From Vitrella brassicaformis CCMP3155 (taxonomy: Eukaryota > Protista > Chromerida), in NCBI GenBank assembly GCA_001179505.1, contig CDMY01000929.1, positions 1 through 64,000 of the forward strand: a DNA stretch of 64,000 nt, given 5' to 3'. Of the stretch, positions 1-20,715 are shown in pieces. The stretch's first letter is position 1. Each line of letters begins with the position of its first letter. The notes under the pieces are model-generated. The model worked only from the letters and a program-made list of their open reading frames with translations. It searched no databases and had not been told where the DNA came from. Both the position numbers and the translations under genes were made by a program.

Positions 1-1129
1 CATCAGCAGCATTGATAGCACGCGGCTGAAGAACACTTCACGGGGTGACAGCATGACGGTCCATCCTTCATAGTTTTCGTATTCTTCCTTCCAATGCTTT
101 GTGACGAGAGAGATGCAGTTGGCTGTCGCAATCATTGGCAGCAGAAGGAAGGAAAAGACACGAGTGGCCTGACAGAGAGGGGAAATCTCTTGTGCGGGTA
201 ACTTGTGTGACGACAGAGAGGGGCTCTGCCGACTCCAGCAGCAAAAACCACTTTTTTTGTTTGCCTGCAAGTGAGTCTCGGAAGTAGACCTCTGCGGTGT
301 CGCTGCAGAAATTGGCTGTGAGCGCCTGCACCGAGTGGACAATCAATGCGACAGTGAAGCCTGCTGTGTCTTTTGGTCATTATTTACCTCCTGCCAGTTG
401 GAAATCTTGGACAGGTCACTCAAGTTATAGAAGAACAAAAGACAAGCGATGTTCGGATGCGTGTAACATCCGATATTCTCGATTTTACTCTGTGAGGAAG
501 TCCTTCGGTCGTGTCTTCATCAGCTTGCGGAAGACGGCACAGCAGCGAAGACTGTCGAGGCCCACCGACTCAGAGTGGTCCTTCAGGAATCGCTTCGTGG
601 AGGGCACCGCCTCCTTAAGGATCTCCAGAGAGACAGAAAGCACTATGTCTTGTTCCTCTCCTTTCAGAACCACCGCCCCAGTGTAGACAAGAAACCGCAC
701 TGATCCCGCAAACTTCGACATCAGCTGCTCAATATGACGACGTCAAGCGTATCAGAAGCGAGACCGTTGGCGGGGATAGGTTCATTGTGCGGACCATTCC
801 GATGTTTGCATAACTTCAACGTCGGCCGGGGGGAAGTGGAGCAATATCATTGTCGACTCGTCTTGATTCTGCTGCAGACTCGCCATTTGAGACAGACCCA
901 TCGGCACCGTGCGGTGCGGGTGGCCAGGAGACATCATCGCCGTCGGCGTGTCCCTGAGACCTGCATGATGGGCAGGAAGCGCGTGACACCGTGCAGCCTC
1001 AGTCGAGCGGCTTTTCTTCTGTTCTGTCATCGTGTGTATAGGCTGCGACAGGGTGTGCAATGCAGTTTTGTCGCGCAATGCGTCAGATGCCTGTGTTCCC
1101 TTCTGTCTGTGTTTGCTGTGCCTGTCTGA

Positions 1130-1335
1130 AAACGTGCGACGTACGTCATATATACACACTCCGAGTCCAAAGGTGCATGCGCACACCTGCGCGCAGGTGC
1201 GCGCACAGAGACAATCATCATATACACACACTCCAAGTCGACGCGTGCATGCGCCGGAGGTGGGCGCACACAGACATTCATTATATATTCACATTCCAAG
1301 TCTGAACGTGCATGCGCAGGTGTTCGCACACAGAG
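1130..1335 (+). repeat. ~60-bp minisatellite, about 3 units (ATATACACACTCCAAGTC..ACGTGCATGCGCAGGTGTGCGCACAGAGACA..)
   Basis: The tandem unit is directly visible; the same unit recurs at 2445-2652 (same orientation) and 2655-3610 (inverted). Confidence 0.9.
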
Positions 1336-1367
1336 AGACAAGTGAGAGTGAAGAAAGTGTGAGGATG

Positions 1368-1752
1368 ATGGAGCAGGGATGCTCTGAATGCCGGCATGAT
1401 CACTTCTATCTGAAAGCTCTGGTGCCTTCATGTGACTGAGTGACTGTACAGTAGAGTCGACATCTGAAGCTAGAAACTTGTCTATCGAGCTTCTGATGAC
1501 AGCTGCGATGCTCCTTCTTCTCTTGTGGATTTGCTTGTATATGGTTGCTTCTCAGTGTGCCCGATTGTTTTGCGTCTCAAGAGGGAGGATGCGGATTGCT
1601 GTGGGCTGGTGCATCCTCAGTCATTTTTCAGTTCACTTTCGTCTTCTGGCAAACGACTTATGGCAGAAAGACCGAGGGAGAAGAGGTAGTGAAGATAATG
1701 ATACATGGAGCAGGGATGCTTTGAATGCCGGCAAAATCAATCTTATCTGAAA
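1368..1752 (+). repeat. Unclassified AT-rich dispersed repeat, copy 1
   Basis: The motif ATGGAGCAGGGATGCT(C/T)TGAATGCCGGCA occurs at 1368 and 1705. The block between them (about 1478-1650) aligns by eye to about 22225-22400. Confidence 0.75.
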
Positions 1753-2444
1753 CGATTCCGTGACATCAACACATCGTTGATTTCTTAGTGGAGCTGACGA
1801 ATAGACGCTGTTTTGTCAGTCTGCTTGATAATTCTCATGCAGCTGGAGCTTCGATGCATGGAGGCGGCATTTGTGCGAAGAGTGCATATGATAAGACCGT
1901 CCAAAAAAGACGAAGTGGAAAAAATGAAGCCTGTACGGATCTCAACCAATGAAATGTTTGAAATCTTTCTTCCAAGTTCAACGGAGTTTTGCAGAGCCTG
2001 GGATAGACTGCTAAAGAGCCTGCGTCAGAGACTGTTCAAGCTTTAAACTCTGCCATCACTAACACTACAAATCGCCTTTTCTCGGCCGCATTCAAGAAAC
2101 GTAAAACAACACTTTTCTCGGAATGCATCCGAAAGGAGGTTTTTTGAAAGACTAGTCTCTCGCATGCATTCTCTCGGCTCCGAGAAAGTCTTTCACCCGT
2201 GATTGCGACAGCAAGATAAAACCTAAAGACCAGTGTCTGAAGGAGCCTGTTCGATGGTCCATTCCAGACTCTGAAAAGCTCTACTAACCTGCAAGATACA
2301 ACTAATGCTTTTAGAAGTGTTGCTACTTTCTTAATCATAGCAAAATGAAAGCCTGCAAAAAATGTATGTGGCACAGCCTATGGAGCGCTCCAGTTCTAGA
2401 TTGCTCGCGCAGTGTTCTTTCTTTCGCTATCAATTGTTTCGGTA

Positions 2445-2652
2445 TATTATATATACACACTCGAAGTCAACACGTGTATGCGCAGGTGTGCGCACAGAGA
2501 CATCCACCATATGCAGACACTTCAAGTCTAAACGTGCATGTACAGGTGCGCGCACAGAGATATTCTTAATATGCACACTCCCAACTCGACGCGTGTATGG
2601 GCAGGTGTGCGCACAGAGATATTCTTTATGTACACACACTCCAAGTCGACGC
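2445..2652 (+). repeat. ~60-bp minisatellite, about 3.5 units, forward orientation
   Basis: Same unit as 1130-1335; ends abruptly at GTCGACGCG, where the orientation flips. Confidence 0.9.
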
Positions 2653-2654
2653 GG

Positions 2655-3610
2655 GTGAATGTCTGTATGCGCATACCTGCGCATGCACGTTTGGACTCGG
2701 AGTGGTTATATCTGATGAATGCTTGTGTGCGCAGTGTGCGCACACTGCCCATACACGTTTGGACTTGAAGTGTGTGTATCTGATGAATGTCTGTATGCGC
2801 AACACTGCGCATGTACGTTTGGACTTGGGGTGTGTGTATCTGATGAATGTCTGTGTGCGCACAGTGCGCATGCACGTTTGAACTTGGAGTGTGTCTATAT
2901 GATGAATATCTTCATGCGCACACCTCCGCATGCACGTTTGGACTTGGACTGTGTACATGGCGCGTGCACGTTTGGACTTGGAGTGTGTGTATATGGTGAA
3001 TGTCCCTATGGGTAGACGATGAATGTCCCTATGTGGACACCTGCGCATGCACGTTTGGACTTGGGGTGTGTATCTGATGAATGTCTGTGTACGCACACTG
3101 CGCCTGCACGTTTGCACTTGAAGTGTGTGTATAAGGCGCATGCACGCGTCGAGGTGCAGTGCGTCTGAGATGAATGTCTGTGTGCGCACACCGCGCATGC
3201 GCGTTTGGACGTGGAGTGTGTGTATATGGTGAATGTCCCTATGGGTACACGGTGAATGTCCCTATGTAGACACCTGCGCATGCACGTTTGCACTTGAAGT
3301 GTGTATATGGCGCATGCACGCGTCGAGGTGCAGTGCGTCTGAGATGAATGTCTGTGTGCGCACACCTGCGCATACGCGTTTGGACGTGGAGTGTGTGTAT
3401 ATGGTGAATGTCCCTATGGGTAGACGGTGAATGTCCCTATGTGGACACCTGCGCATGCACGTTTGGACGTGGAGTGTGTATATGGTGAATGTTCCTATGG
3501 GTACACGGTGAATGTCCCTATGTGGACACCTGTGCATGCACGTTTGCACTTGAAGTGTGTGTATATGATGAATGTGTGAGTGCGCTATCTGCGCACGCAC
3601 GTCTGGACAC
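2655..3610 (-). repeat. ~60-bp minisatellite array in inverted orientation, with higher-order ~174-bp units
   Basis: The unit GATGAATGTCTGTGTGCGCACACCTGCGCATGCACGTTTGGACTTGGAGTGTGTGTAT is the reverse complement of the 1130/2445 unit. The variant GCGTCGAGGTGCAGTGCG recurs at 3146 and 3320. Confidence 0.9.
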
Positions 3611-3649
3611 GTCGAAAGCATCGTTACCGACATCTCACACACAATCTGT

Positions 3650-4193
3650 CTCTGACACAGTAGATCACATCGCAGAGCACAAAGAAGAGGCGCTGACTTT
3701 GAAAAAGGAGAAGAAGCCAGAAGGACGAGAGAAGTCAGGCGAAGCGGTCCTTTTTCAGGAAGGTATTCCACGATTTGAACGATTCAGGCCCTCGACTTTG
3801 ACAAGCTTCTTAACCACCCCCATCAATGGTGCACTGAGTGTTCTCGATGCAGTCAGACCATGTATCTGTCCTCCTTTAGAAAGATGAGCACGGAGAGAAA
3901 CAGAAGGTGCTTTGCTTCAAAAAGACGGCACGGATGAGAAGTGCAATGAAGATTCCAGCAACGCTCGTACGCGGCTTGAAAAAAGACAGTGGATGCAAAA
4001 TTGGAGGGCGGTGAAAAAGAGGAAAACAAAGCACTCCTCTTTCCATGCTATTAACGCAACCGTACTCTTGAGAGCAGCACTGTTGAGAGGCGCAATCGAC
4101 TTGAGACCATATGACTCTCGAAAAGCACTCAGTAGTACACATGCCCAATCATATGATGTCGAGAGCAAAAGAAAAGCGAGTACGTCTGGATGA
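3650..4193 (+). pseudogene. Possible degenerate coding remnant, unknown product
   Basis: Lys/Glu-rich reading frame; ORFs 3489..3887 and 3912..4193 are in frame across a single TGA. No recognisable domain. Confidence 0.25.
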
Positions 4194-4652
4194 CTAGGAG
4201 AAAACCGCTAAGAAAAGACAGTTCTCGTCATCCTTATCTTTCATACAGTTGTTGTACTCCTTATCGCGTAGAAGACCCGTCATGCCTACATGCCGAGCGT
4301 CTACATACGTACAAGTCGGAACGACGAAGGCACATGCAGTGAGACAAAAAAAAAGGAACATTCTGTATGAACCAAGAAATCACGAAAACAGTGTAACCCC
4401 ATACCACCATGCGCACTATGCGACAGAAGGAGGGAGGTCTCAAATTGACAGTAAGAAAGTACATAAGCGGCACTACAAGAAGGGGCTACTACGAAGCCTC
4501 CTTGCCAGACCTGCCCCCCTCTTGTGGAGATGCTGAAAGAGCACGATTTGTCCTGCACTTCGCGTCCGGACGCCTGAAGGACAACAGCAAGTAGCAACAG
4601 TCGGGAACGACTGGGCACTATGTCGGCAGACCACTGCTCTGTGTTCGTTTAC

Positions 4653-4919
4653 TTATTTTGCGGCAGTATGAGACTGCTCAATGCCGGTCACACCACCAGC
4701 AAGTTCACGGGGCACTTCTGCATTATCCTTGTGAGCCACTGCTCCTTTCGGCATGTCCTCTTGGGTCCGCAAGAGTTCACGACGCGTAGAGCGGCAGCAG
4801 GCACCCGATGGTAGGCAGTAAGGAGGAGAACATCCGGAACCAGGGCAAGGGACACACTGTTGCACCGACGGCTGAAGGACGGCCAGAAGAATGACGAGAG
4901 CCAAGACGAGCTTCATCAT
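4653..4919 (-). CDS. Small secreted cysteine-rich peptide precursor (88 aa, intronless)
   Basis: MMKLVLALVILLAVLQPSVQ (signal-peptide-like), then QCVPCPGSGCSPPYCLPSGACC (6 Cys), then RSTRRELL (dibasic site) and a polar tail ending in TAA at 4653. Confidence 0.6.
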   Translation of the reverse strand: MMKLVLALVILLAVLQPSVQQCVPCPGSGCSPPYCLPSGACCRSTRRELLRTQEDMPKGAVAHKDNAEVPRELAGGVTGIEQSHTAAK

Positions 4920-5175
4920 GCTTGCGGGGTGGATGAAGAGGTGTTCGAAAGAGGTGCTTTGTGACGAAGGAATTTGTCGATCCACAGGGAGAGGAGATGG
5001 AGAATGCTTGTGATATGAGCACGATCCAACGTGCGATATCACGGGTTCCGAGACGTGGCAAGATGGGTCATCCTTCTGTCCCAGGGATCTGTCAGTGATT
5101 CTGTGTGACACCTTCGTGGAGTGGACCTCCGCATCGTCTGTCACTGTCTTTTCTGTGGTGTCCTGACATCGTTTT

Positions 5176-7061
5176 GTGGTGCTGATGTCGGAACCGAGTG
5201 TTTCTGCTGCGGACGTCCAAGCAGCTGCTGCTGCTGCGCGTGAGTCTATCGCGGTGGAGCGAGAGCCGCCTGCCCTGCTACAAGCCGAGAGCGTATGTGA
5301 CTTGATTGGTGCTCTCGAGTCAGAGGTCGACATTCTCCGCCAGGCTGTCGAGTCGTTGGCCAAGCAGTCACCCGTCACCCACCTTCTTCCAGACTCCCCC
5401 CTCGCCAGATTCCGCTCGTCGGAGGTCACTGACGTGGTCCTCGAGGTCCTGCAGGAGCACGGCTTTGCCAGCCGCAAGCTGGAGTTCAAGGCGGAGCAGG
5501 GAGGGTAGATGACGGCGGGCAGGGCTGTGTTCGACGTGTCCAAGATCGATGAGCCGCATGCCGAGCGTCTCTTCCGCGCCATTCACGCCAGGTACGGCGA
5601 CTCCATGGACGACAAGCAGGCGGCCAGGCAGTGTCGTGACGTGTGGGACAAGACCAAGGACGTGGCCGCGGCGATGAAGCGCTCTTGGCTGGACGTCTAC
5701 GACAGGGCAGGGCGGTATGTGCTGTTTGGCGGGGTGATCAGGCGGCTGGGCCAGGATGTGTTTGCTGAGGTGGATCAGGACATCTTGCTGGCCCTCCTGC
5801 CTCGCCTCCTCATTCATCAGAACAGGTTCGACGAGAGAGGGCAAGCCAGGAAGGGAGGGAGTATCGCGGTGGTGGGGCTTTGGGGCCGATGTGTGCGTGT
5901 ATGTGTGTGTGTGTGTGTTGGGGGGTATGTGTTTGTGGCTCCTGTTGTTTTTCCTACCTCAGTGATTTGTCATTGCCTCACAAGAGGCCGCACACGGCCT
6001 CGTCTTCGTCCGCCCAATCCTCTCTCTCCTCCACCCACGCCCCCACTGCCGGCGCCACGCCTGCTCGTCCTCAGCAGCAGCAGGCGCGTCGCGACAGAGA
6101 CCGTGACTTTTGTGACAACTGCCGCTACGGCTATGATCGCGCATACCCCCACGGCCACCGCACCGGTCGCTGCCCCGACCCCTGGAAGCTCAAGTGCTTC
6201 ATCTGCAAGAGGGCTGAGCGTGCTGACTGCATTCATCGCTATGACCTGTGTCCGCTCAGGCCTCGCCCGTCGTCCCAGTCCCCGCCTCCCCCTCCTTCTG
6301 CGTCGTCAGCAGGCAAGTGAGGGAGAGGCTGCCGGCCTGGCGCATTTTTTGTGAATGCGTAGCGATGTGTGTGGGCGTGTGGGTAGCGTGTGTGTGTCCT
6401 TCCATTTTTCTTGTCGTCTCTATCGGCTCGTGCTGTCTTCCCAGGTTTGTCGCAAGCGGACAGTGTCCCGCCTCTCCCCTTGCCTGCGTCGTCAGCAGGC
6501 AAGTCGTCCAACTGGTGTGGGGATTGCGTGTTCGGGCGGGGTGTTGGTGTATGTGGGGCGTCTTCGATAGTCTGCCTGCTGGCTGTCTTGTCCGTCTTGT
6601 CCTGTTTCGTTTGCTTGCTTGCGGCTCTCCTCAGATGGGTCGCGAGCGAGTGCCGTCCTCTTGTCGCTTCCTTGCGTCCCTCCCCTCCACCCGCCATCAA
6701 CAGGCAAGTGTGGGTGGGGTGCGGCCTGTCGGTCAGCCTTCTGTCAGTCAGCCTTCTGTCGTTGTCTTTGTCGTTCATTCGTGTGTCGGACTCATGTCTT
6801 GCTTCTCAATGTATTTCTTGCCGGTCCCATCGCTGTCATTCTTGCCATCTTGCCTGCTTGCCATTCATTCCGGGTCTGAAGCAAGCAGGCGGCCTGTCAT
6901 TCGTCTCTTATGTCCAAGGCCGCTCATCTCTTCCGTCCACCCACCCTTTCTTTGCCCGCCGCCGGTCAGTTGACGATATGCAGATCGACACACATGACGT
7001 CTCCGTGGCTTCTAAGGTGCCCATTGCTGTGCCGCCCATCTCCAGCACGGACACAGGTTAG
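5176..7061 (+). pseudogene. Intron-containing gag-like ORF1 with two extended CCHC zinc knuckles
   Basis: Exons 5176-5840 (in-frame TAG at 5506-5508), 5963-6312, 6445-6498, 6635-6703 and 6970-7061 splice in frame via GC..AG introns. Knuckles are CDNC..H....CP and CFIC..H....CP. Confidence 0.7.
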
Positions 7062-7090
7062 CTGCCGCACTGGGTCAACAACCTCTTGGC

Positions 7091-8704
7091 TTGGGTTCGT
7101 CTGTCTTGTCTGCTCGTCCGTCTCTTCCCTCGTCGCCGTGGCTTCGTGGCCATCGTCTGCTTACGAAGGCAGCAAGACACTTGGGTGTTCCTCTTAGTGT
7201 GTGTCGGGCGTGGGCTGAGGGTGTTGATATGTTGCTTTTTCGCTCGCCGTCTCGGTTTTTCCATAGCAACCATTCCTCTGTCTATGAGTACGGTGATAAA
7301 GTAGCCAAGGTGCTAGACAAGGCAGAACAGAAAGGATACATTCAGCTAGTCGATCACCAGCCCTTCATCGTCAGTCCTCTCGGGGCTGTGCGCAAGTCGA
7401 CCCCCGGCGAAGTTCGTATCATTATGGACACGTCTATTTCGGATCTCAATGACTGCCTTTTTGTGCCTGACATCGTATTGCCGTCGATTTTCGATGCAAT
7501 TCGTCTTCTCAAGCCTGGTCATTACATGCGCCAGCTTGATCTTAAGGATGCTCATCAGCATATCTACATCAATCCTGCCGAGGCCGATTTGCTTGGGTTC
7601 AAGCATCCGTCTTCTGGCCGCTTTTATGTCTGGCGTTTCATGCCATTCGGCTTGAGCTCTGCTCCCTTTCTTTTTGTCAAAAGCATATCGTACTTGAGGG
7701 CAGTCCTCGTCTCTCTCGGGCTCGAGTCTCTTCTCGATGACTTTTTTGTGGAGGGCTCTTCATTCGATCGTTGCGACGGTCACATGCGTCTTGTCTCGGA
7801 TGTATGTGGGCGTGTGGGGTGCGAGATTAGTAAGGACAAGGTTTTTGGGCCTTTGCGCGACCTTGAGTCGGTCGGTTGGCTCATCGACTATCTCCTGCAC
7901 GCTGTCGATTATGGATAAGAAGCGTCAGAAGATGCTCTCTCGCTTGCAGCAGCTTTTGGATGTTCCGCCTTTTGGCCCTCCATTGTCGGTGGTCTTGAGT
8001 GTCATCGGCTCTCTCTCTCATCTGTGTGATATCTTGCCTGACGGTGCTTTCCATCTGCAGCCCTTGTTATCTCTCTCTGCTCAGTCTACTCCTTCTGCGT
8101 CCGTGCGGACGTCACACAAGCTGTCTGTCGCTTACAAAAATTAGCCTGTTCCATTGCCGGGTCAGGGCGACAGTTTTTGATCGCACTTGCATTGGTGGCG
8201 TGACCAACTTTCTGTTTGCCCGTTTCGTCGTCTGTTTGTCGGTGCTGACGGATTTCTTTTGTGGGATCCTCATTTAGACCCGGCTTTCGCTGTGCCGTCC
8301 ATTCTTTCCCTCCCTCCACCTGCACGTATTGTTGGGTCGCCGAATACCCCAGCTATCTTCGTTCTCCTCACTGATGCCAGTGAGGAGGGTTGGAGAGCGG
8401 TTTGGGGCGAGCATGTAGCCAGAGGCAGATTTTTGGTATCCCTAGATGGAACCACTCGCCCCTCTTGCCCCGCCTTCGCCTTTGTCGTCCTTCCAGCAAT
8501 TGGCGTGAGTTGGCAGCTGTTTTGTTTGCCCTTCAGCGCTGGGCTCCTTTCTGGCGGGATGGTTTAGTGGCTCTTGGGTCAGACAATAGCAATGTCGTGT
8601 CATGCATTAATAAGCGCCGCAGTTCTTTTCGCGGCATCATGCATGTCGCTCTTCTTCATTCGCATCTTCATTTCATGATGTGCATTATCTGTCGTCTTCC
8701 TTGA
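7091..8704 (+). pseudogene. DIRS-type reverse transcriptase / RNase H, frameshifted
   Basis: ORFs 7091..7918, 7737..8144, 8187..8567 and 8390..8704 carry consecutive RT, connection and RNase H motifs in different frames. The catalytic YxDD reads LLDD. Confidence 0.88.
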
Positions 8705-9156
8705 TTTCTCACATCGCGCAAAGGCTGCGCTTGCGTTTCACTTTGCATTTCGGCTGTCTTCTCCCGTCTGACTCGCCTGTTTCCGTCGCTTGCCATCCCT
8801 GCATTCTACTGTAGACCGAGTGTCCGGCCCCATTCTTCTGACTCCCTCTACTGGTTTGACCGTCCAAGCGTTCAATTTACGTTGCTCGTCTTTGCCAAGT
8901 GTCAATTCCCGGTAGTTGTGGTCATTCATAAGCCTCTCTCTCTTACTGCCACTCGCCTTGCCCACCGCTTTTCTGAGTTGCTGCAGTGGCCGAAAGGCTC
9001 TCGTGTATTGTCATTGGCAAGGATAGCTTCTGACGGCTCTGTTGTGCATTCTTCACACTGTCAGCCAGCCAAACATTCCCTTCCGGTCTGCTTTCTTATG
9101 CCCTCGCCTTCTTAACCTTCTTCTTGGTGTGTTTGTGTCTGTGTGTGTGTTGTAGG

Positions 9157-9900
9157 TCTCAGGCGATGTCGGCTATTTCTCTCTCTCACCCGCCCTACCG
9201 TCCGCTCCCGACATCTTTTTGTACATTCTGCGGTGGATCGGGCTTTATGTCTGTTGCCCCGTATCCATCTCCTCCCTTACTCGCACATGCACGCGTTGCT
9301 TGTATATGCCAATCGTCGGGCGTTTATGCGAGGATTGCGTCGTGTCTCTGACAATACTTACTGTGGTAAGCTCCCTATCCCACCCGTCGGTTGGCGTCTG
9401 GACGTGCGTATGTGGCTATGTGTGTATCTGCAGACGTCAGTCAATGTGCGGGTTATTCAGATGAGGGCAGTATGACCATTCAATTTTCCCTGGACAACAC
9501 ACATCTCATGAGGTCGGCAAAAAGCACCCTGACTCATGCCATCCATCGCGGTGCATTGCTGTCTCCTACTCAGGAGGGCCACAGGGACGCTTCCGCTGAA
9601 GGTTGCAGCAAAGTGATGGAGCGCACGTACGCAGCGTCAGCTCGTTGTGCAGAGGCCTTCGAGCTGCTTGGGGGTTACTGCAGCCTGATGGCCGTGATGC
9701 CCTTTGGTCAGGCCGCCAAGTACATCATCACGGTCGTGGAGGCGCACCTGGACAAGTAAGCACCACACACACACACACTGCATCACCAAGATGTGTATCA
9801 CTTGTAGGCCGTGTGCCTTAGGTTCCCGATGCGTTCACTTAATCCCGACGGCGCCGTCCAAGTGGGCCGCCTTCGCCAAACGCCTTCCACACTCTAGTGC
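9157..9900 (+). pseudogene. Multi-exon fragment of an uncharacterised family (paralogue of 18.8-19.1 kb)
   Basis: Exons SDEGSMTIQFSLD.. and ..FELLGG..MPFGQAAKYIITVVEAHLDK match SDEGRSTVQFPID.. and ..FQSFGG..MPIDEACKYIITVVES*LNK, with the same exon order and a similarly placed downstream donor. Confidence 0.65.
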
Positions 9901-11081
9901 AAAGACAGATGCATACACACAGTCACACATACATGCTCACTGGGGCGAGCCTTTTTTCTCGTTTTGCTGCGCATGTGTGCACCTATGCCAAGCGTGGATC
10001 ATCTGATCGTGTCAGTTTTGCGTGGATGTATGCATGAGTGTCGTCGCCGATTTTCCGCAGTCCTGTCGAGCGTGTCATTCCACTTCTAGTTCTGTCTGCA
10101 TCCATGTATACATGAAGCTGGCTTTTCTCCATTGCATGTAGGAGGGAGAGTGCACATCAGAGCGCTCGTTTCGTGTGCATGCACCCTCTCACACGTGCAT
10201 ACGTTTTTTCTTCATGCCATCTTTTTTCGATGCCGTCCGATAGATAGAGCCGTCAGTCAGTGCCATCCTGTGTCGTCCTCTTTGTATCAGCTAGGGCTGT
10301 GAGAGAGAGAGTAACTGCTTCCTTCTTTTGCATCAGTCAGTCGCTAGGTCAGTCGCCGTTCACCACACACCTCTTACATGCACGATGCCACGCTTGATGC
10401 ACATGCATGCACGCATAGATTATCTACGCACACGTGCACACACACGCACATGCTTACTGGGGCGAATCCTTCTCTCTCGCCTCGGTGCACATGTGTCATC
10501 ATGTGTGTGCGCATGTGTGCCATCTGCATCTATGTATGTATGCTTGTTGAGCGAGCCAGGCCACTCTCTGCGTGGCGGTGTTGTGTGGGATGTCCTCTGT
10601 GTGAGAGTCCACAGCGCGTGCGTGTCACATTACTTCTGTCTGCATGCATTCATAGGTGAGACTGGCTATTTTACATTCCATCGTATTGCTGAGCTGGCAT
10701 GATGCGTATGCCCAAGTGTGTGTCGATAGTCAAGACAGACAGGTGGATGAATTGTGATGCATGCATGCGTGTTTACGATGACTGGACGGGTGGGTGGGTG
10801 GCCTTGCGCATTGGCTGGCAACACATTACATGACTGCCACGCGCGTGTTTGCATTGCAATGAAGTAAATCAATGAAGTTGGTTGACTTGTTGATTGACTA
10901 GTCCGAGTTGACCATCTAAGTACACAATCGTGCAACATTCATGCATGAATTGAGGTGCTTCATCAACAGAGAAAGTTATACACGAAAGGCCACACCAGAC
11001 TCAGCCTTACTACACACACAAAAGACTCATCAGATCCGGCCACAGACGCAGCATCAGGCGCTCATCTGATCTGCCTGCCCT

Positions 11082-11740
11082 TCACATCACACTGAGCACC
11101 TCCACTTCATCAGCCATGAAATACTGACTGCCCCTAAACAGAGCACGGCCATCCCCATCCCTCACCCCCACACAGGCCAAAGGCACATCGCGGCTGGAGA
11201 TGTACTGAAAGCAGCTACGCAAATCAGCAGCAGGGCTGCCCTCGTTGCCCAAAGACAACCACTCGATCATCAGCTTCTCCCGCCCCCCAGGCACTGTCCC
11301 GTCCGCCCAGTCACAGACACTGACTGGATACCTGCCGCCATCTGCCTCCTCCCGCGCAGCTACAGACACGAACTGCCTGCCTTCCATCATCTTGGTCGGT
11401 TTGTCGAAGTAGCGGTGAGGGAGAACTGCCACACATCACAGCAGTATGTATTCACTCTTCTTGGGTCATCTGGCAGCTCGATGCCGTCACTCATGTAAGC
11501 GCCGAACACCTAGCCGCCCTTCTTGATGGCAAATACCAGGCCACGGGCATCGCCCACACACCGCAGCATATCAGCATACGATGGTCCATTACGAGATGCT
11601 CTGCAGAGAGAAGAGATTGACAGATATACCACGCATCAAAGGCAAGTGTACCTGTAGATGAGCTTCAGTCTGATATTTGCGACTGTCAGTCCAAGGAAGC
11701 GATAGAGTGCAGCGGATTTGACGGGATCCAACGTTGAATC
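11082..11740 (-). pseudogene. TLDc-domain protein remnant, copy 1
   Basis: ..LRCVGDARGLVFAIKKGG*VFGAYMSDGIELPDDP..VWQFSLPHRYFDKPTK..LFRGSQYFMADEVEVLSV: TLDc core with an internal stop. Confidence 0.75.
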
Positions 11741-11849
11741 CTCGATCACCTGCGATGACAGACAACGATAGAGAGCATAGGTAGAATACTGATGCTTCTT
11801 CGTCTTGCTGATGTGTGTGTCACCTTTAGCGACCGAAGTGAGCGGCCGT

Positions 11850-12218
11850 CGACACGAATAACCTCCACTTCATCAGCCATAAAGTCCCAACTGCCCCCAA
11901 AGAGAGCATGGCCATCCCTACGCCTCACTCCCTCATAGCCCTCAGGCAATTCATCTCTGTCGATGTACTGAACGCAGTTGCCCATGTCACCGGCAGGGCC
12001 ACCCCCATGGCCTAACCACAAGCACCCACCGATCAGCACCTTCGCCCCCCCATGCACTATCCCCTCCCGGCCAGCCACATACACTGATTCCCGGACTTTC
12101 ATCATCTTGGTCGCTTTGTCGAAGTGGCCGGCCAGCGAGAAACGCCACAGACCACACTGGTAGCTGTCGTAGCTTGTTGGATCGTCGGGCAGTTCGATGC
12201 GGTCGTTGAAGTAGGCGC
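11850..12218 (-). pseudogene. TLDc-domain protein remnant, copy 2 (3' half only)
   Basis: AYFNDRIELPDDPTSYDSYQCGLWRFSLAGHFDKATK..LFGGSWDFMADEVEV, a paralogue of copy 1. Confidence 0.75.
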
Positions 12219-12310
12219 CTCGCCCTCACCCTTTCGCCTCTCAAATTCATCCACCAATTGCAGCCGCTCGCCGATTGTCACCTCGCCTGCATTCTTGGTG
12301 GTCACCCGAC
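12218..12310 (-). mobile_element. Short pogo-like transposase N-terminal fragment
   Basis: GEVTIGERLQLVDEFERRKGEGEA is near-identical to REVTIGERLQLADEFNRRKQSGEA at about 14100-14180. Confidence 0.65.
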
Positions 12311-13363
12311 GACAGACAGACCAGAGCATTCTACCTGTCTTGAAGTGAATACATTCCCTCTACCTGTGCGGCTTGTGGTGTCGTATGTCTTGCTTCGGGC
12401 AGGGAGGGCGGGAGGGACTCCGCGCGATACCGTGCGAGTCGCCGTCGACGCAGAAAGGGGCGACTGGTTCACCCACGCTGATCGCCGGCCGACCCATAGC
12501 TATCAGTGGATGTTTCAAAAAGGCCGACTCAGGGTCATCTGAAGCCGCTACACAATCGACATACAATTGCATCTTTGTCTGCACGGCTCTCGGCATGTGT
12601 TGTTTTTCCGCTCACGGGCAGACGATGACTGTTGGCGAGCGCCGCCCTCCGAACCGACGGGCGGCTCGACTCCCGCTGTCCGTATCTGCAGGACACAACG
12701 GACACAGTGATGTTAGATTAGCGCTCATTGGATGTCGTGTACACGCCGTATCCCTGTGGTGCATGTGATGGTCTTGTTTGAGGGCCCCATCTCGTTGGGG
12801 ACGTAAGGGATGTGAAACATCGACCATCCGTCAAGATACGCCCGGACACTGCAACCTGGATTGTAATGGTGACTTCGCTTGTGTTGCTCGAGAGCTGGCG
12901 GCCGAAATGACAGTGCGTCTGGTGTCACGCCGGCGGGCCGGAAGGCCATCTGCCAGCCACGGCCGAGAGTGCGCTTCACACATGATGCTTCGATCCACGC
13001 GTTACGGTGCTCAGCTGGGGCTTGCGGCTGAAAGCGGCTGCAGTCGAGATGGAGGTCGTCCCAGTGTTCGCTGAGGATTTAGAGAAACGCCTCTCCCATG
13101 GGCACAGCGGCCTCGTGGGCTCGCTCGTGCAGCGGTTGGCTGACAAGACCCTGCATGACAGCACAGACATGCATGCAGAGGGAGCCCACTGGCCCGTCTT
13201 GGCATCTTACCGCCCGATTGGCACTCTTTGCTTCATTCGATGGAGGGCCCAGAGGTTCAGCTGCACTGAAGTAGTGTGTAGCGGCGGCAGCCTCCTCGTC
13301 GGTGCCGACCGAGGAGGATGCGTGCGCAGGCGGGGGAGGCAGGGGCCTGGGCGGGGGATAGGG

Positions 13364-13663
13364 NNNNNNNNNNNNNNNNNNNNNNNNNNNNNNNNNNNNN
13401 NNNNNNNNNNNNNNNNNNNNNNNNNNNNNNNNNNNNNNNNNNNNNNNNNNNNNNNNNNNNNNNNNNNNNNNNNNNNNNNNNNNNNNNNNNNNNNNNNNNN
13501 NNNNNNNNNNNNNNNNNNNNNNNNNNNNNNNNNNNNNNNNNNNNNNNNNNNNNNNNNNNNNNNNNNNNNNNNNNNNNNNNNNNNNNNNNNNNNNNNNNNN
13601 NNNNNNNNNNNNNNNNNNNNNNNNNNNNNNNNNNNNNNNNNNNNNNNNNNNNNNNNNNNNNNN
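13364..13663. other. Assembly gap (300 N)
   Basis: Run of N flanked by G-rich sequence. Confidence 1.
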
Positions 13664-13779
13664 GGGGGGGGGGGGGGCTCTATGGCGGGCTGCTCGTCCA
13701 CTGAAGGCTGCTGAGGGGCCAAAGCAAGACCCTGACGACCAAAGGGGACAAGAAGTCGATGAAGCACCACCCTCACTGT

Positions 13780-14200
13780 GTTCTGTCCGACCTGCTGGTA
13801 TCGTTTCTTGACCGCTTTGATCCACGTGTCGCTCGCCGAAAAGCCACTGATGCCCAGCCGTACGAAGCCTGCATCGCCTTCTCCCTGATGGCCATAGGGG
13901 GGACGCTTGTGGGGTCATCATGGCCAGCCATCAACTGGCGGATCTCATCCTCAATCTGCGGATATTGCGGCGGTCTGTTGCGCCTCTTGATGGGATCCAG
14001 CACCTGCGTGCCCGCCTCCCTCTGTTTCTTGACGGCATAGTGCCACTCCTTGAACCGATGCGGATCCTTGCCCTTCTCCTTCGCAAACTGAGCCATCGAG
14101 ATGGCCTCGCCGCTCTGCTTCCGTCGATTGAATTCGTCCGCCAGCTGCAGCCGCTCGCCGATGGTCACCTCGCGTGCCCCATGAGTGGCCACCTGAAGGG
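13780..14200 (-). mobile_element. pogo/Tigger (Tc5, CENP-B-like) transposase DNA-binding region, truncated
   Basis: A first HTH (ERLQLADEF..SMAQFAKEKG..FKEW) is followed by RNRPPQYPQIEDEI..IREKA..ASYGW..FRR, typical of the HTH_Tnp_Tc5 domain. No intact DDE domain was seen. Confidence 0.75.
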
Positions 14201-19800: not shown

Positions 19801-20715
19801 CGCCATCTCTGTTGTCTTCTGGTGGTGGTTGTCTTTCTTCAGATACAGCTGGTACTTGACTGCTGCTGATGCTGCAGTACCAGTCAAATGAGAGCAAGCC
19901 TGCTGACAGACCTGTTCAGATCTGGCAGTCGGTTGGCGAGGGCTTCGGCTCAGATGAATAGGAACCAAGTCGCTGCGCCCATGTGCAAAAAAAGGCCGGT
20001 GAAGAGCTCTTCTATAGTAAGCTGAAGAGAGGATCTGTTAAGCGGTGAGTCCCAGAGTCAGATTGCTTTCACTTCAGTGAGGCTAATGGACTGGCCAGTC
20101 AGTAGTCGTTTCTGTCCACATGTAGCATCATGAGGGGTGGTCAACACAGATCTGCGTTCGGTGATGGCTGAAAAGGTTGTCTGCACTGCCAGACGCATAA
20201 GTTCCCTCGCGAACGCTTGCCTTCTAGCGCGCCCTTGCGTGAAACACACAGCGACCCTAGCTAACAAGCCTAGCCCACAAGTGGGTCGTCTTACTGTTTT
20301 GACAGGCTGTGAGCGTATCATTCCGCAACAATGCCTTCCCTTCCCCCCCGTCCATTCAGCTTGCCCCTCGATTATTCAACTGATCTTTGGGATTGCGTTC
20401 GTCGTTGCTTCAGGTGTGAATCTCGCTAGAGTGAACGGCGCGCCGCATTTGAAGCAAGAACCGCTGGAGGTACAGCTTACGGGAACTGCGTCCGGTCGGG
20501 TCTCAAAGCGACCCTTCACCTCGTAGCGCCCACCTCGACCGTAATGGAACGGAAGAAAGATTCGGTCCTGGGGTTCATTTCCTTGGCAGGTGAGCTCCGT
20601 CAGACGCGCGACTGCTTTCAGACTAGCGTTTGTCAGCCTAAAGCCTAAAACCTTTGAACACTTCCGAGCCCGGGTTTGTCTTGAATGCCTCTTTCGCTTC
20701 TTTCCTGGCAGGTTG

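What the first reader, a model, noticed from the sequence alone, without database searches (positions are those of the whole stretch)
5176..7061. Retrotransposon gag-like ORF interrupted by four consecutive GC-AG spliceosomal introns
Seen: introns 5841-5962 (phase 2, GCAAGC..CTCAG), 6313-6444, 6499-6634 and 6704-6969 (all phase 1, CAG|GCAAGT..CAG). Removing them gives one continuous frame from the helical N-terminal region through two zinc knuckles to the TAG at 7061, just before the RT ORF. Known: retroelements normally lose introns on reverse transcription; intron-bearing tyrosine-recombinase retroelements are exceptional, and GC donors are usually a small minority. Inference: this family keeps an unspliced genomic RNA and uses weak GC donors to ration spliced gag mRNA, a splicing-based gag/pol and packaging switch.
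Basis: partly seen in the sequence, partly recalled or inferred. Interest (0 to 1): 0.85.

Follow-up and report, generated by a model that had tools for sequence, protein, structure and literature searches.

The report
Spliced introns in an algal retrotransposon
A decayed tyrosine-recombinase (DIRS-like) jumping gene of the alga Vitrella is transcribed and really spliced: one ordinary intron lies inside its gag gene, and two GC-AG introns begin right at gag's stop codon, in the spacer before pol. Three relatives share this layout, which suggests, without proof, that splicing joins gag to pol.

Summary

**What the RNA shows.** RNA-derived contigs from three studies show three real introns:
- 6313-6444, GC-AG;
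- 6499-6634, GC-AG.

The fourth intron (6704-6969) has no support; unspliced contigs cross both of its ends.

- There is an in-frame TAG at 5506.
- Unspliced gag ends at TGA 6318-6320, inside the first GC intron.
- "Exon 5" is the start of pol. In the sister copy on contig C508 its frame runs straight into the conserved pol start. The TAG at 7061 is in frame only because of a 2-nt length difference in the window copy.

So introns 2-4 lie in the gag-pol spacer, not inside gag.

**State of the element.** It is a relic: gag has a premature stop, the RT/RNase H region has two frame breaks, and the recombinase has faded. It has one damaged sister copy and no intact or intronless copy.

**The GC donors.**
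- The two confirmed ones share a duplicated exon-tail module.
- They match the donor consensus perfectly outside +2.
- They are GT in relatives.
- Host genes gave 17 of 17 GT-AG.

**Best reading (about 0.5).** The spacer is an ancestral stop-containing intron. Unspliced RNA gives Gag; spliced RNA would give Gag-Pol. Three relatives show the same phase-matched layout by sequence only.

The parts
5016..5184 (+). 5' leader; left edge of the unit shared with the sister copy on contig C508
   Evidence: blastn window 5016-5924 = C508 59480-58555(-), 94%; alignment. RNA contigs begin further upstream (4918/4930), so the transcription start is not known.
5185..5825 (+). gag exon 1: N-terminal coil and helical domain
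   Evidence: Translation; matches annotated protein P0001 of Vitrella brassicaformis CCMP3155; paralogue on C24, 45% identity.
5506..5508 (+). Premature in-frame TAG in gag, followed directly by ATG 5509
   Evidence: The C508 copy has a sense codon here. No RNA variant at this place in four runs. The public gene model steps over it with an 87-nt GT-AG 'intron' (5505-5591) that no contig supports.
5826..5962 (+). Intron 1, GT-AG, 137 nt, phase 2, G+T-rich with a (TG)n run
   Evidence: Joint 5822>5960 'GT..AG cut +3' in X1, X2, X3, X5. An intron-like gap at the same place in the C24 paralogue. A phase-2 intron before the linker in the C33 element, by sequence only.
5963..6312 (+). gag exon 2: Ser/Pro/Gln-rich linker and two Cys/His clusters
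   Evidence: Similar to the C33 gag exon, E = 3e-5. Weak colinear similarity to the C1057 gag. No Pfam family.
6313..6444 (+). GC-AG intron, 132 nt, phase 1, donor CAG|GCAAGT
   Evidence: Joint 6309>6442, ambiguous over 4 nt, only GC..AG fits; seen in X1, X3, X5. An unspliced contig 6284-6471 is also present.
6318..6320 (+). TGA that ends gag in unspliced RNA, at intron positions +6 to +8
   Evidence: Sequence. P0001 ends here. C1057 has the same geometry: G|GTACGTAA, with TAA at +6 to +8.
6445..6498 (+). Micro-exon of 54 nt between the two confirmed GC-AG introns; its tail copies the tail of exon 2
   Evidence: Both edges fixed by RNA joints. 6467-6504 versus 6281-6318, 84% identity; z = 8.4 against shuffles.
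6499..6634 (+). GC-AG intron, 136 nt, phase 1, donor CAG|GCAAGT
   Evidence: Joint 6495>6632, only GC..AG fits; seen in X1, X3, X5. An unspliced contig 6469-6661 is also present.
6635..6703 (+). Second micro-exon of 69 nt; only its 5' edge is shown by RNA
   Evidence: for the 5' edge. The 3' edge rests only on the CAG|GCAAGT motif at 6704.
6704..6969 (+).
   Evidence: No joint; unspliced contigs cross both ends. More C-rich than the three confirmed introns. The donor reads GCAAAT in the C508 copy.
6978..7061 (+). Start of pol (ATG 6978), not the end of gag; the frame is broken here in this copy
   Evidence: In the C508 copy this frame continues without a stop into the conserved pol start. The window differs in length by 2 nt at 7051-7052, which brings TAG 7059-7061 into frame. 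Relatives have their first pol Met 8 to 39 codons before the same motif.
7088..8647 (+). Reverse transcriptase and RNase H, with two frame changes (about 7890 and 8393-8441)
   Evidence: Pfam RVT_1, E = 4.6e-10. 42% identity to ORF2 of the intact element on C499, in three frame pieces. An RNA contig 7099-9364 is identical to the genome.
9214..10597 (+). Faint traces of the tyrosine recombinase (CxxCGGSG-type motif 9214-9264; HSLR.GG motif 10562-10597)
   Evidence: Weak hits, but two recombinase queries give concordant hits at each of the two places. None is significant alone.
9366..9433 (+). Short GT-AG intron spliced in the recombinase remnant; a second one lies at 9513-9573
   Evidence: Joints 9364>9433 (cut +1) and 9510>9572 (cut +2) in X3 and X5.

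Best explanation
This is a transcribed relic of a DIRS-like (tyrosine-recombinase) retrotransposon of Vitrella brassicaformis. Its gene order is gag, RT/RNase H, recombinase.

Shown:
- Its RNA is spliced at one GT-AG intron inside gag (5826-5962) and at two GC-AG introns (6313-6444 and 6499-6634).
- Unspliced forms coexist with the spliced ones.
- gag carries a premature TAG.
- pol is frame-broken.
- The one sister copy keeps the same introns.

Shown by comparing sequences:
- Unspliced gag ends at TGA 6318-6320, three bases past the donor hexamer.

Inferred, and the mechanism I commit to:
- The whole stretch 6313-6969 (657 nt, a multiple of 3, phase 1 at both ends) descends from one ancestral intron that holds gag's stop codon and the gag-pol spacer.
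- Unspliced RNA is translated into Gag alone. It is also the template that gets copied, which is why copies keep their introns.
- Spliced RNA joins gag to pol in frame and gives a Gag-Pol fusion.
- In this lineage the donor became GC, compensated by a perfect match at the other donor positions. The exon-tail-plus-donor module was duplicated, at least for the two confirmed donors, so the spacer is now removed piecemeal through two micro-exons.
- In this dead copy the last piece is not removed, so no fusion is made today.
For: RNA joints and unspliced contigs.

Position of the stop: TGA at +6 to +8 of the donor, and the public model P0001 ends there.

Identity of 'exon 5': in the C508 copy its frame reads on into the conserved pol start.

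The same layout appears in three diverged relatives whose RTs are 35-44% identical to the window's:
- C1057: gag ends ..AAG G|GTACGTAA (stop at +6 to +8, phase 1). The acceptor lies 8 nt before the pol ATG. The 340-nt gap joins two different frames into one.
- C33: three GT-AG candidates, which I picked by eye from their donor and acceptor signals while reading the sequence with its three-frame translation. Removing them leaves one open frame from gag through both Cys/His clusters into pol. The third candidate holds gag's TAG and is phase 1.
- C499: the best donor (phase 2) and the best acceptors are in frame.

The window's gag and the C33 gag are homologous.

C1057 lacks the internal gag intron but keeps the spacer layout. 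This is what one would expect if only the spacer intron is needed.

Both micro-exons are multiples of 3 in length (54 and 69 nt).

The exon-tail module of the two confirmed donors is duplicated.

No intronless copy exists in the assembly.
Against: - No RNA joint removes 6704-6969 or the whole 6313-6969 in four runs. After the two observed splices the frame runs to TGA 6877, not into pol.
- The introns of C33, C1057 and C499 are sequence predictions without RNA evidence.
The phase matches (chance about 1/3 each) are therefore only suggestive.
- In C499, gag and ORF2 are in one frame separated by a single TGA, so read-through would also work.
- pol has its own Met near the acceptor in two elements, so separate initiation is possible.
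- The two window-family copies have evolved without visible constraint since they split.
- Only two close copies and one distant paralogue exist. All are damaged.
Confidence: 0.5

Rival explanations
1. Incidental splicing of a dead element. The spacer happens to contain strong splice signals that the host spliceosome uses on a read-through transcript. The splicing has never had a role for the element.
For: - The copy is dead.
- Two more short GT-AG introns are spliced inside the decayed recombinase region, one apparently cutting former coding sequence.
- The observed splices do not produce a fusion.
- The micro-exons diverge faster than the introns between the copies.
Against: - The donor sits exactly at gag's stop, with the same geometry as in C1057.
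- The layout is phase-matched in four elements.
- Both micro-exons are multiples of 3 in length.
- The signals are conserved in the sister copy.
Confidence: 0.25
2. A gag-derived host gene. ORF1 has been kept as an ordinary spliced nuclear gene with host-type introns, while the pol beside it decays.
For: - It is expressed and spliced in runs from three studies, apparently at higher depth than pol (depth is not reliable).
- It is annotated as a gene.
- Its introns look like host introns, G+T-rich with (TG)n.
- Earlier notes of this scan report retroelement genes turned into host genes in this genome (untested here).
Against: - A premature TAG is fixed in all four runs.
- Both paralogues are broken.
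- dN/dS overall is about 0.7.
- There is no homologue outside this genome among 1.84 billion representatives.
- The RT/RNase H region is only lightly damaged, so the death of the element looks recent.
Confidence: 0.1
3. One reading: four GC-AG introns interrupt gag, and weak GC donors ration the spliced gag mRNA against an unspliced genomic RNA.
For: - Two GC-AG introns are real, and unspliced RNA is abundant.
- The sister copy retains the introns.
Against: - Intron 1 is GT-AG and intron 4 is unseen.
- gag's stop lies inside the first GC intron, and 'exon 5' is pol. Gag therefore comes from the unspliced RNA, not the spliced one.
- The GC donors match the consensus better than typical host GT donors.
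- Relatives use GT at the corresponding donors.
Confidence: 0.05

Closest known systems
DIRS-order tyrosine-recombinase retrotransposons (DIRS1, PAT, Ngaro, VIPER groups)
   Same: - A gag-like ORF1 followed by RT/RNase H.
- Relatives in the same genome carry a Phage_integrase-type recombinase.
- No protease or DDE integrase is detected.
- The element sits amid satellite repeats. From my own knowledge, DIRS-1 sits in Dictyostelium centromeres in the same way.
   Different: - The gene order gag, RT/RH, YR resembles PAT/Ngaro rather than DIRS1/VIPER (the order in those groups is from my own knowledge).
- No terminal repeats could be found.
- No formal RT tree was made.
- RNA shows spliceosomal introns here. 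From memory, which I could not confirm in the paper library, introns have been suggested for a few members of the order.
Intact or nearly intact DIRS-like elements of the same genome (contigs C499, C1057, C33)
   Same: - RT 35-44% identical to the window's.
- Same gene order.
- The C33 gag is homologous in the Cys/His region.
- Same donor-at-gag-stop and acceptor-before-pol layout.
   Different: - Their spacer donors are GT, not GC.
- The spacer is one piece, without micro-exons.
- The C1057 and C499 gag ORFs are continuous.
- None has RNA evidence.
Ogre elements of legumes (Ty3/gypsy LTR retrotransposons). From my own knowledge: Neumann et al. 2003; Steinbauerova et al. 2008.
   Same: An intron with stop codons separates the structural part from the RT part. 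It is only partly spliced. This has been proposed to set the ratio of structural to enzymatic proteins while unspliced RNA is copied.
   Different: - Ogre is an LTR element with a DDE integrase, found in plants.
- Here the element is of the tyrosine-recombinase type, in a chromerid alga.
- Complete removal of the spacer has not been shown here.
Drosophila copia and barley BARE spliced gag mRNAs; the spliced pol mRNA of foamy viruses (from my own knowledge)
   Same: Splicing, rather than frameshifting or read-through, sets the relation between Gag and Pol.
   Different: - In copia and BARE the splice removes pol to give a gag-only mRNA.
- In foamy viruses Pol is made on its own.
- Here splicing would remove the stop and fuse the two.
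GC-AG U2-type introns
   Same: GC at +1/+2, AG at the 3' end, and a full consensus at the other donor positions (CAG|GCAAGT). This is the general rule for GC donors (Thanaraj and Clark 2001, listed in the references of PMC4083563).
   Different: - Three such donors lie within 400 nt; the exon tails of the first two are copies of one module.
- A host sample gave 17 of 17 GT-AG.

Membership tests
DIRS-order (tyrosine-recombinase) retrotransposon | Reverse transcriptase with an adjoining RNase H, related to those of recombinase-bearing elements | tested here: met
   Pfam RVT_1, E = 4.6e-10. Window 7088-8641 aligns to ORF2 (RT and RT_RNaseH) of the C499 element, which carries a Phage_integrase ORF.
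DIRS-order (tyrosine-recombinase) retrotransposon | Tyrosine recombinase ORF in place of a DDE integrase | tested here: inconclusive
   In the window there are only weak, concordant motif hits at 9214-9264 and 10562-10597. The feature is clearly present in relatives C499, C1057 and C33.
DIRS-order (tyrosine-recombinase) retrotransposon | Characteristic termini: inverted repeats with an internal complementary region, or split direct repeats | tested here: not met
   No repeat of the left end 5016-5042 anywhere in the window. No terminal direct or inverted repeats in 4900-14000. The copy is truncated or decayed, so this weakens the claim of an intact member, not the claim of descent.
DIRS-order (tyrosine-recombinase) retrotransposon | gag-like ORF1 upstream of pol, on the same strand | tested here: met
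   ORF1 runs 5185-6320 and the pol ATG is at 6978. The C508 copy carries gag plus the first 160 nt of pol. The Cys/His region is homologous to the gag of the C33 element.
U2-type GC-AG spliceosomal intron | Exon-exon junction in RNA with GC..AG ends | tested here: met
   Met for 6313-6444 and 6499-6634 in X1, X3 and X5. Not met for 6704-6969. 5841 is not used as a donor.
U2-type GC-AG spliceosomal intron | Strong consensus at the other donor positions | tested here: met
   CAG|GCAAGT at all three sites. 8 of 9 positions match, against a mean of 6.2 for 14 host GT donors.
Retroelement with a partly spliced stop-containing intron between gag and pol (works like Ogre) | The intron holds the stop of the upstream ORF, and its removal joins the two ORFs in frame | tested here: met
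   Met by sequence in the window (6313-6969, 657 nt), C1057, C33 and C499.
Retroelement with a partly spliced stop-containing intron between gag and pol (works like Ogre) | RNA that shows complete removal and the joined ORF | tested here: not met
   Only two internal pieces are removed in the window copy.
Penelope-like intron-retaining retroelements | Penelope-type RT with a GIY-YIG endonuclease | tested here: not met
   The RT aligns with DIRS-like RTs of recombinase-bearing elements. Pfam found no GIY-YIG domain.

The most novel reading that the evidence does not exclude
A group of DIRS-like retrotransposons in the chromerid alga Vitrella makes Gag-Pol by splicing. An intron conserved across lineages with only 35-44% RT identity starts within a few codons of gag's stop and ends just before pol. 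Unspliced RNA gives Gag and is the copied template, so the intron is inherited through reverse transcription. Spliced RNA gives the fusion. The window holds a GC-donor, triplicated variant of that intron.
Probability: 0.4. Interest if true: 0.7.

Novelty: new variant of a known kind. Interest (0 to 1): 0.55.

Why it matters
Retroelements are expected to lose introns, because spliced RNA is what usually gets copied. The DIRS-1 retrotransposition assays rely on exactly this loss (PMC7192593).

Here RNA shows that a tyrosine-recombinase element carries real introns. Sequence comparison suggests that one of them is kept across diverged lineages because it holds gag's stop codon.

If junction reads in the intact relatives confirm this, it would be a splicing-based way of setting the Gag to Gag-Pol ratio, in place of frameshifting or read-through. 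To my knowledge this would be the first such case in the DIRS order, and it would be an independent parallel to plant Ogre elements. It would also show how an intron can survive in a lineage that replicates through RNA.

If not confirmed, the locus is an ordinary transcribed transposon relic whose spacer is spliced incidentally.

Tried and rejected
rejected. RNA uses the GT at 5826.
- **Intron 4:** no support. This is not a proof of absence, because contigs drop rare forms.
- **The 87-nt GT-AG 'intron' 5505-5591 of the public gene model**, which hides the TAG: no contig supports it.
- **Homologues of the gag helical domain.**
  - The word-indexed search found only the locus's own annotated protein.
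  - HMMER over 1.84 billion representatives found only the C24 fragment.
  - The Atlas search was uninformative; the model is poor, pLDDT 0.43.
- **Search for annotated or transcript-derived fused Gag-Pol proteins** using the C499 pol region: no hit at 1e-5.
- **The look-up of encoding contigs for P0001:** not on record.
- **Pfam on the ORF1 pieces:** nothing.
- **Terminal repeats:** none found.
- **Homology among the intron bodies:** not significant, apart from a weak signal between introns 3 and 4.
- **C1057 frame change inside the RT,** tested as a possible 46-nt intron: rejected. It is a 22-nt tandem duplication.
- **Literature on GC-AG introns in Vitrella, or on introns in DIRS elements:** nothing relevant in the library.
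- **RT phylogeny against DIRS, PAT, Ngaro and VIPER:** not done, because no named reference sequences were at hand.
- **'GGCAAGT' motifs in host chaperonin genes,** checked as possible GC donors: two are plainly coding Gly-Lys or Gly-Gln, with GT donors nearby; the rest are unclear.
Full report
**Organism and setting.**
The window is the first 64 kb of a contig (C929) in a 72.7-Mb, 1064-contig assembly. The protein library holds an annotated protein of this very locus. It is named by its source as a product of Vitrella brassicaformis CCMP3155, so the host is a chromerid alga.

Upstream of the finding lie two repeats. One is a satellite of roughly 150-bp units with hundreds of copies in the genome. 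The other is a multi-copy repeat at 3608-5000.

**Checking the observation.**

I laid Logan contigs of four public runs from three studies on 4300-9800. Run X1 covers only about 4918-6790 and nothing further, so it behaves as RNA. X3 and X5 cover everything, but they carry exon-exon joints at depths close to those of the flanking exons, so they also contain RNA.

The joints show:
- **Intron 1** is 5826-5962 with a GT donor, in all four runs. The GC at 5841 is not used. The two candidate donors are 15 nt apart, so the phase is the same.
- **6313-6444** is spliced in X1, X3 and X5. The junction is ambiguous over 4 nt, and only GC..AG gives recognisable ends.
- **6499-6634** is spliced in the same three runs, again with GC..AG as the only fit.
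- **6704-6969** gives no joint. Contigs run unspliced across its donor and its acceptor.

Unspliced contigs identical to the genome also cover introns 2 and 3.

**What the element is.**
Downstream, 7088-8641 aligns to the RT/RNase H ORF of an element on contig C499 at 42% identity. The alignment falls into three frame pieces, so there are two frame breaks. Pfam finds RVT_1.

The C499 element has three long ORFs: ORF1, RT/RNase H, and a Phage_integrase-type recombinase. Elements on C1057 and C33 have the same order.

In the window the recombinase survives only as weak but concordant motif hits at 9214-9264 and 10562-10597. No terminal repeats were found.

The locus is thus a decayed DIRS-like element of about 5.6 kb. 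An RNA contig identical to the genome spans 7099-9364. It is joined over two short GT-AG introns in the recombinase remnant.

**Copies.**
The RT has no other copy at nucleotide level. The unit 5016-7137 has one sister copy on C508, 92-95% identical. That copy is split within the (TG)n run of intron 1 by about 25 kb, and it ends against an inverted recombinase fragment of another family.

The sister copy keeps all the introns and the first two GC donors; the third donor reads GCAAAT. It has its own two stop codons and a 5-bp deletion, and it carries a sense codon where the window has TAG 5506.

Exons and introns have diverged alike, at 4-10%. dN/dS is about 0.3 in exon 1 and about 2 in exon 2. 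I see no clear constraint since the copies split.

A distant paralogue on C24 (45% identity in the helical domain, with the Cys/His pattern conserved) has an intron-like gap at the place of intron 1. It is also broken.

No intronless copy exists in the assembly. No homologue was found outside this genome.

**Where gag really ends.**
The public model P0001 uses the RNA-supported junction 5825|5963. It then reads through the GC donor and stops at TGA 6318-6320. This stop lies at intron positions +6 to +8 (CAG|GCAAGTGA).

In the C508 copy this frame continues without a stop into the conserved pol start (GLGSS..., window 7088). That stretch aligns with residue 193 onward of C499 ORF2 and with residue 52 onward of the C33 RT ORF.

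The window differs in length by 2 nt at 7051-7052, and this brings TAG 7059-7061 into frame. 'Exon 5' is therefore the start of pol, and TAG 7061 is not gag's stop.

Introns 2-4 and the two micro-exons lie in the gag-pol spacer. The intact C499 element has an A-poor spacer of similar size at the same place.

**The GC donors.**
The exon tails before the two confirmed GC donors are copies of one module: 6281-6318 versus 6467-6504 at 84% identity, z = 8.4 against shuffles. All three GC donors share only a shorter 28-nt motif around the junction (71-79%). The micro-exons are 54 and 69 nt.

The two confirmed GC donors therefore trace to one origin, and the third may too.

They are not obviously weak. 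CAG|GCAAGT matches 8 of 9 consensus positions, whereas 14 host GT donors match 6.2 on average.

As a host control I solved 14 exon junctions of chaperonin (Cpn60/TCP1) genes from profile coordinates and frames. All have a GT-AG solution with zero length offset, and none needs GC. Three more introns in the same loci are also GT-AG. GC-AG is thus a minority in host genes; this small sample bounds its share below about 16%.

Earlier first-stage notes of this scan mention GC-AG introns in host genes elsewhere in the genome. I did not verify them.

**The same layout in relatives (sequence only).**
- **C1057.** gag ends ..AAG G|GTACGTAA. This gives a phase-1 donor with the stop TAA at +6 to +8, exactly the window's geometry. 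A good acceptor lies 8 nt before the pol ATG, as in the window. gag and pol are in different frames, and the 340-nt gap joins them in frame.
- **C33.** I picked three GT-AG candidates by eye, from their donor and acceptor signals, while reading the sequence with its three-frame translation (124, 82 and 182 nt). Removing them leaves one open frame from gag through both Cys/His clusters into pol. The third holds gag's TAG and is phase 1. The first is phase 2 and precedes the linker, like the window's intron 1. The C33 Cys/His exon is homologous to the window's (E = 3e-5).
- **C499.** The best donor (phase 2, 60 nt before gag's TGA) and the best acceptors are also in frame. However, gag and ORF2 share a frame there, so read-through would serve as well.
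- **C1057 again.** It lacks the internal gag intron but keeps the spacer layout.

**Mechanism.**
I take the stretch 6313-6969 (657 nt, a multiple of 3, phase 1 at both ends) to descend from one intron that holds gag's stop and the spacer.
- Unspliced RNA gives Gag and is the copied template. This would explain why the introns persist in a lineage that replicates through RNA.
- Spliced RNA would give Gag-Pol.

This works like the plant Ogre elements (from my own knowledge).

What has and has not been shown:
- Shown: the donor at gag's stop is used.
- Not shown: complete removal of the spacer. After the two observed splices the frame runs to TGA 6877, not into pol.
- The relatives have no RNA evidence.

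**Limits.**
- Contig depths cannot be compared, and holes in coverage prove nothing.
- Joined (spliced) models were only translated in local scripts. They were not sent to any search or folding tool.

Noticed in passing
window 2500-3608: Array of a satellite of roughly 150-bp units. 559 matches across dozens of contigs, many at contig ends. The same satellite flanks the sister copy on C508.
   Followed up: partly
window 3608-5000: Multi-copy repeat, 85-90% identical on C740, C611, C778, C1032, C1001 and C622. Its right end lies about 15 nt before the element. RNA contigs over it are very deep (100-3000) and variant-rich. The gag transcript seems to start inside it.
   Followed up: partly
window 9366-9433 and 9513-9573: Two short GT-AG introns (68 and 61 nt) are spliced in runs X3 and X5, inside the decayed recombinase region. 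The first may cut former coding sequence.
   Followed up: partly
window 6385-6600: In X2, X3 and X5 a contig matches only 6385-6600 (end of intron 2, micro-exon, intron 3) and runs on into unrelated sequence on both sides. The assembly holds no third copy. Unexplained.
   Followed up: partly
window 5505-5591: The public gene model for this locus skips the premature TAG with an 87-nt GT-AG 'intron' that no RNA contig supports. It looks like a gene-prediction artefact.
   Followed up: yes
window 19990-20073 (-): A 28-codon stretch 71% identical to the first part of the C499 ORF1 frame. The same stretch sits at the end of contig C24 (4033-4071). It is probably a shared terminal part of the C499-type elements.
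   Followed up: no
L050 (C499) 1469-1471 and 5404-5859: In the intact C499 element, ORF1 and ORF2 are in one frame separated by a single TGA. Downstream of the recombinase ORF there are two perfect 100-nt direct repeats, 356 nt apart.
   Followed up: no
L052 (C1057) 6521-6559: A 22-nt tandem duplication inside the RT shifts the frame of this otherwise intact-looking element.
   Followed up: yes
C508 33106-58555: The sister copy is split inside the (TG)n run of intron 1 by about 25 kb of satellite and other sequence. This could be a rearrangement or an assembly join.
   Followed up: no
L055-L062 (host chaperonin genes): Host introns are short (67-139 nt). Their donor consensus is loose (GTACGT, GTCAGT, GTACAC). 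In one intron read in full the 5' part is AC-rich, and (TG)n runs commonly lie just before the acceptor.
   Followed up: partly
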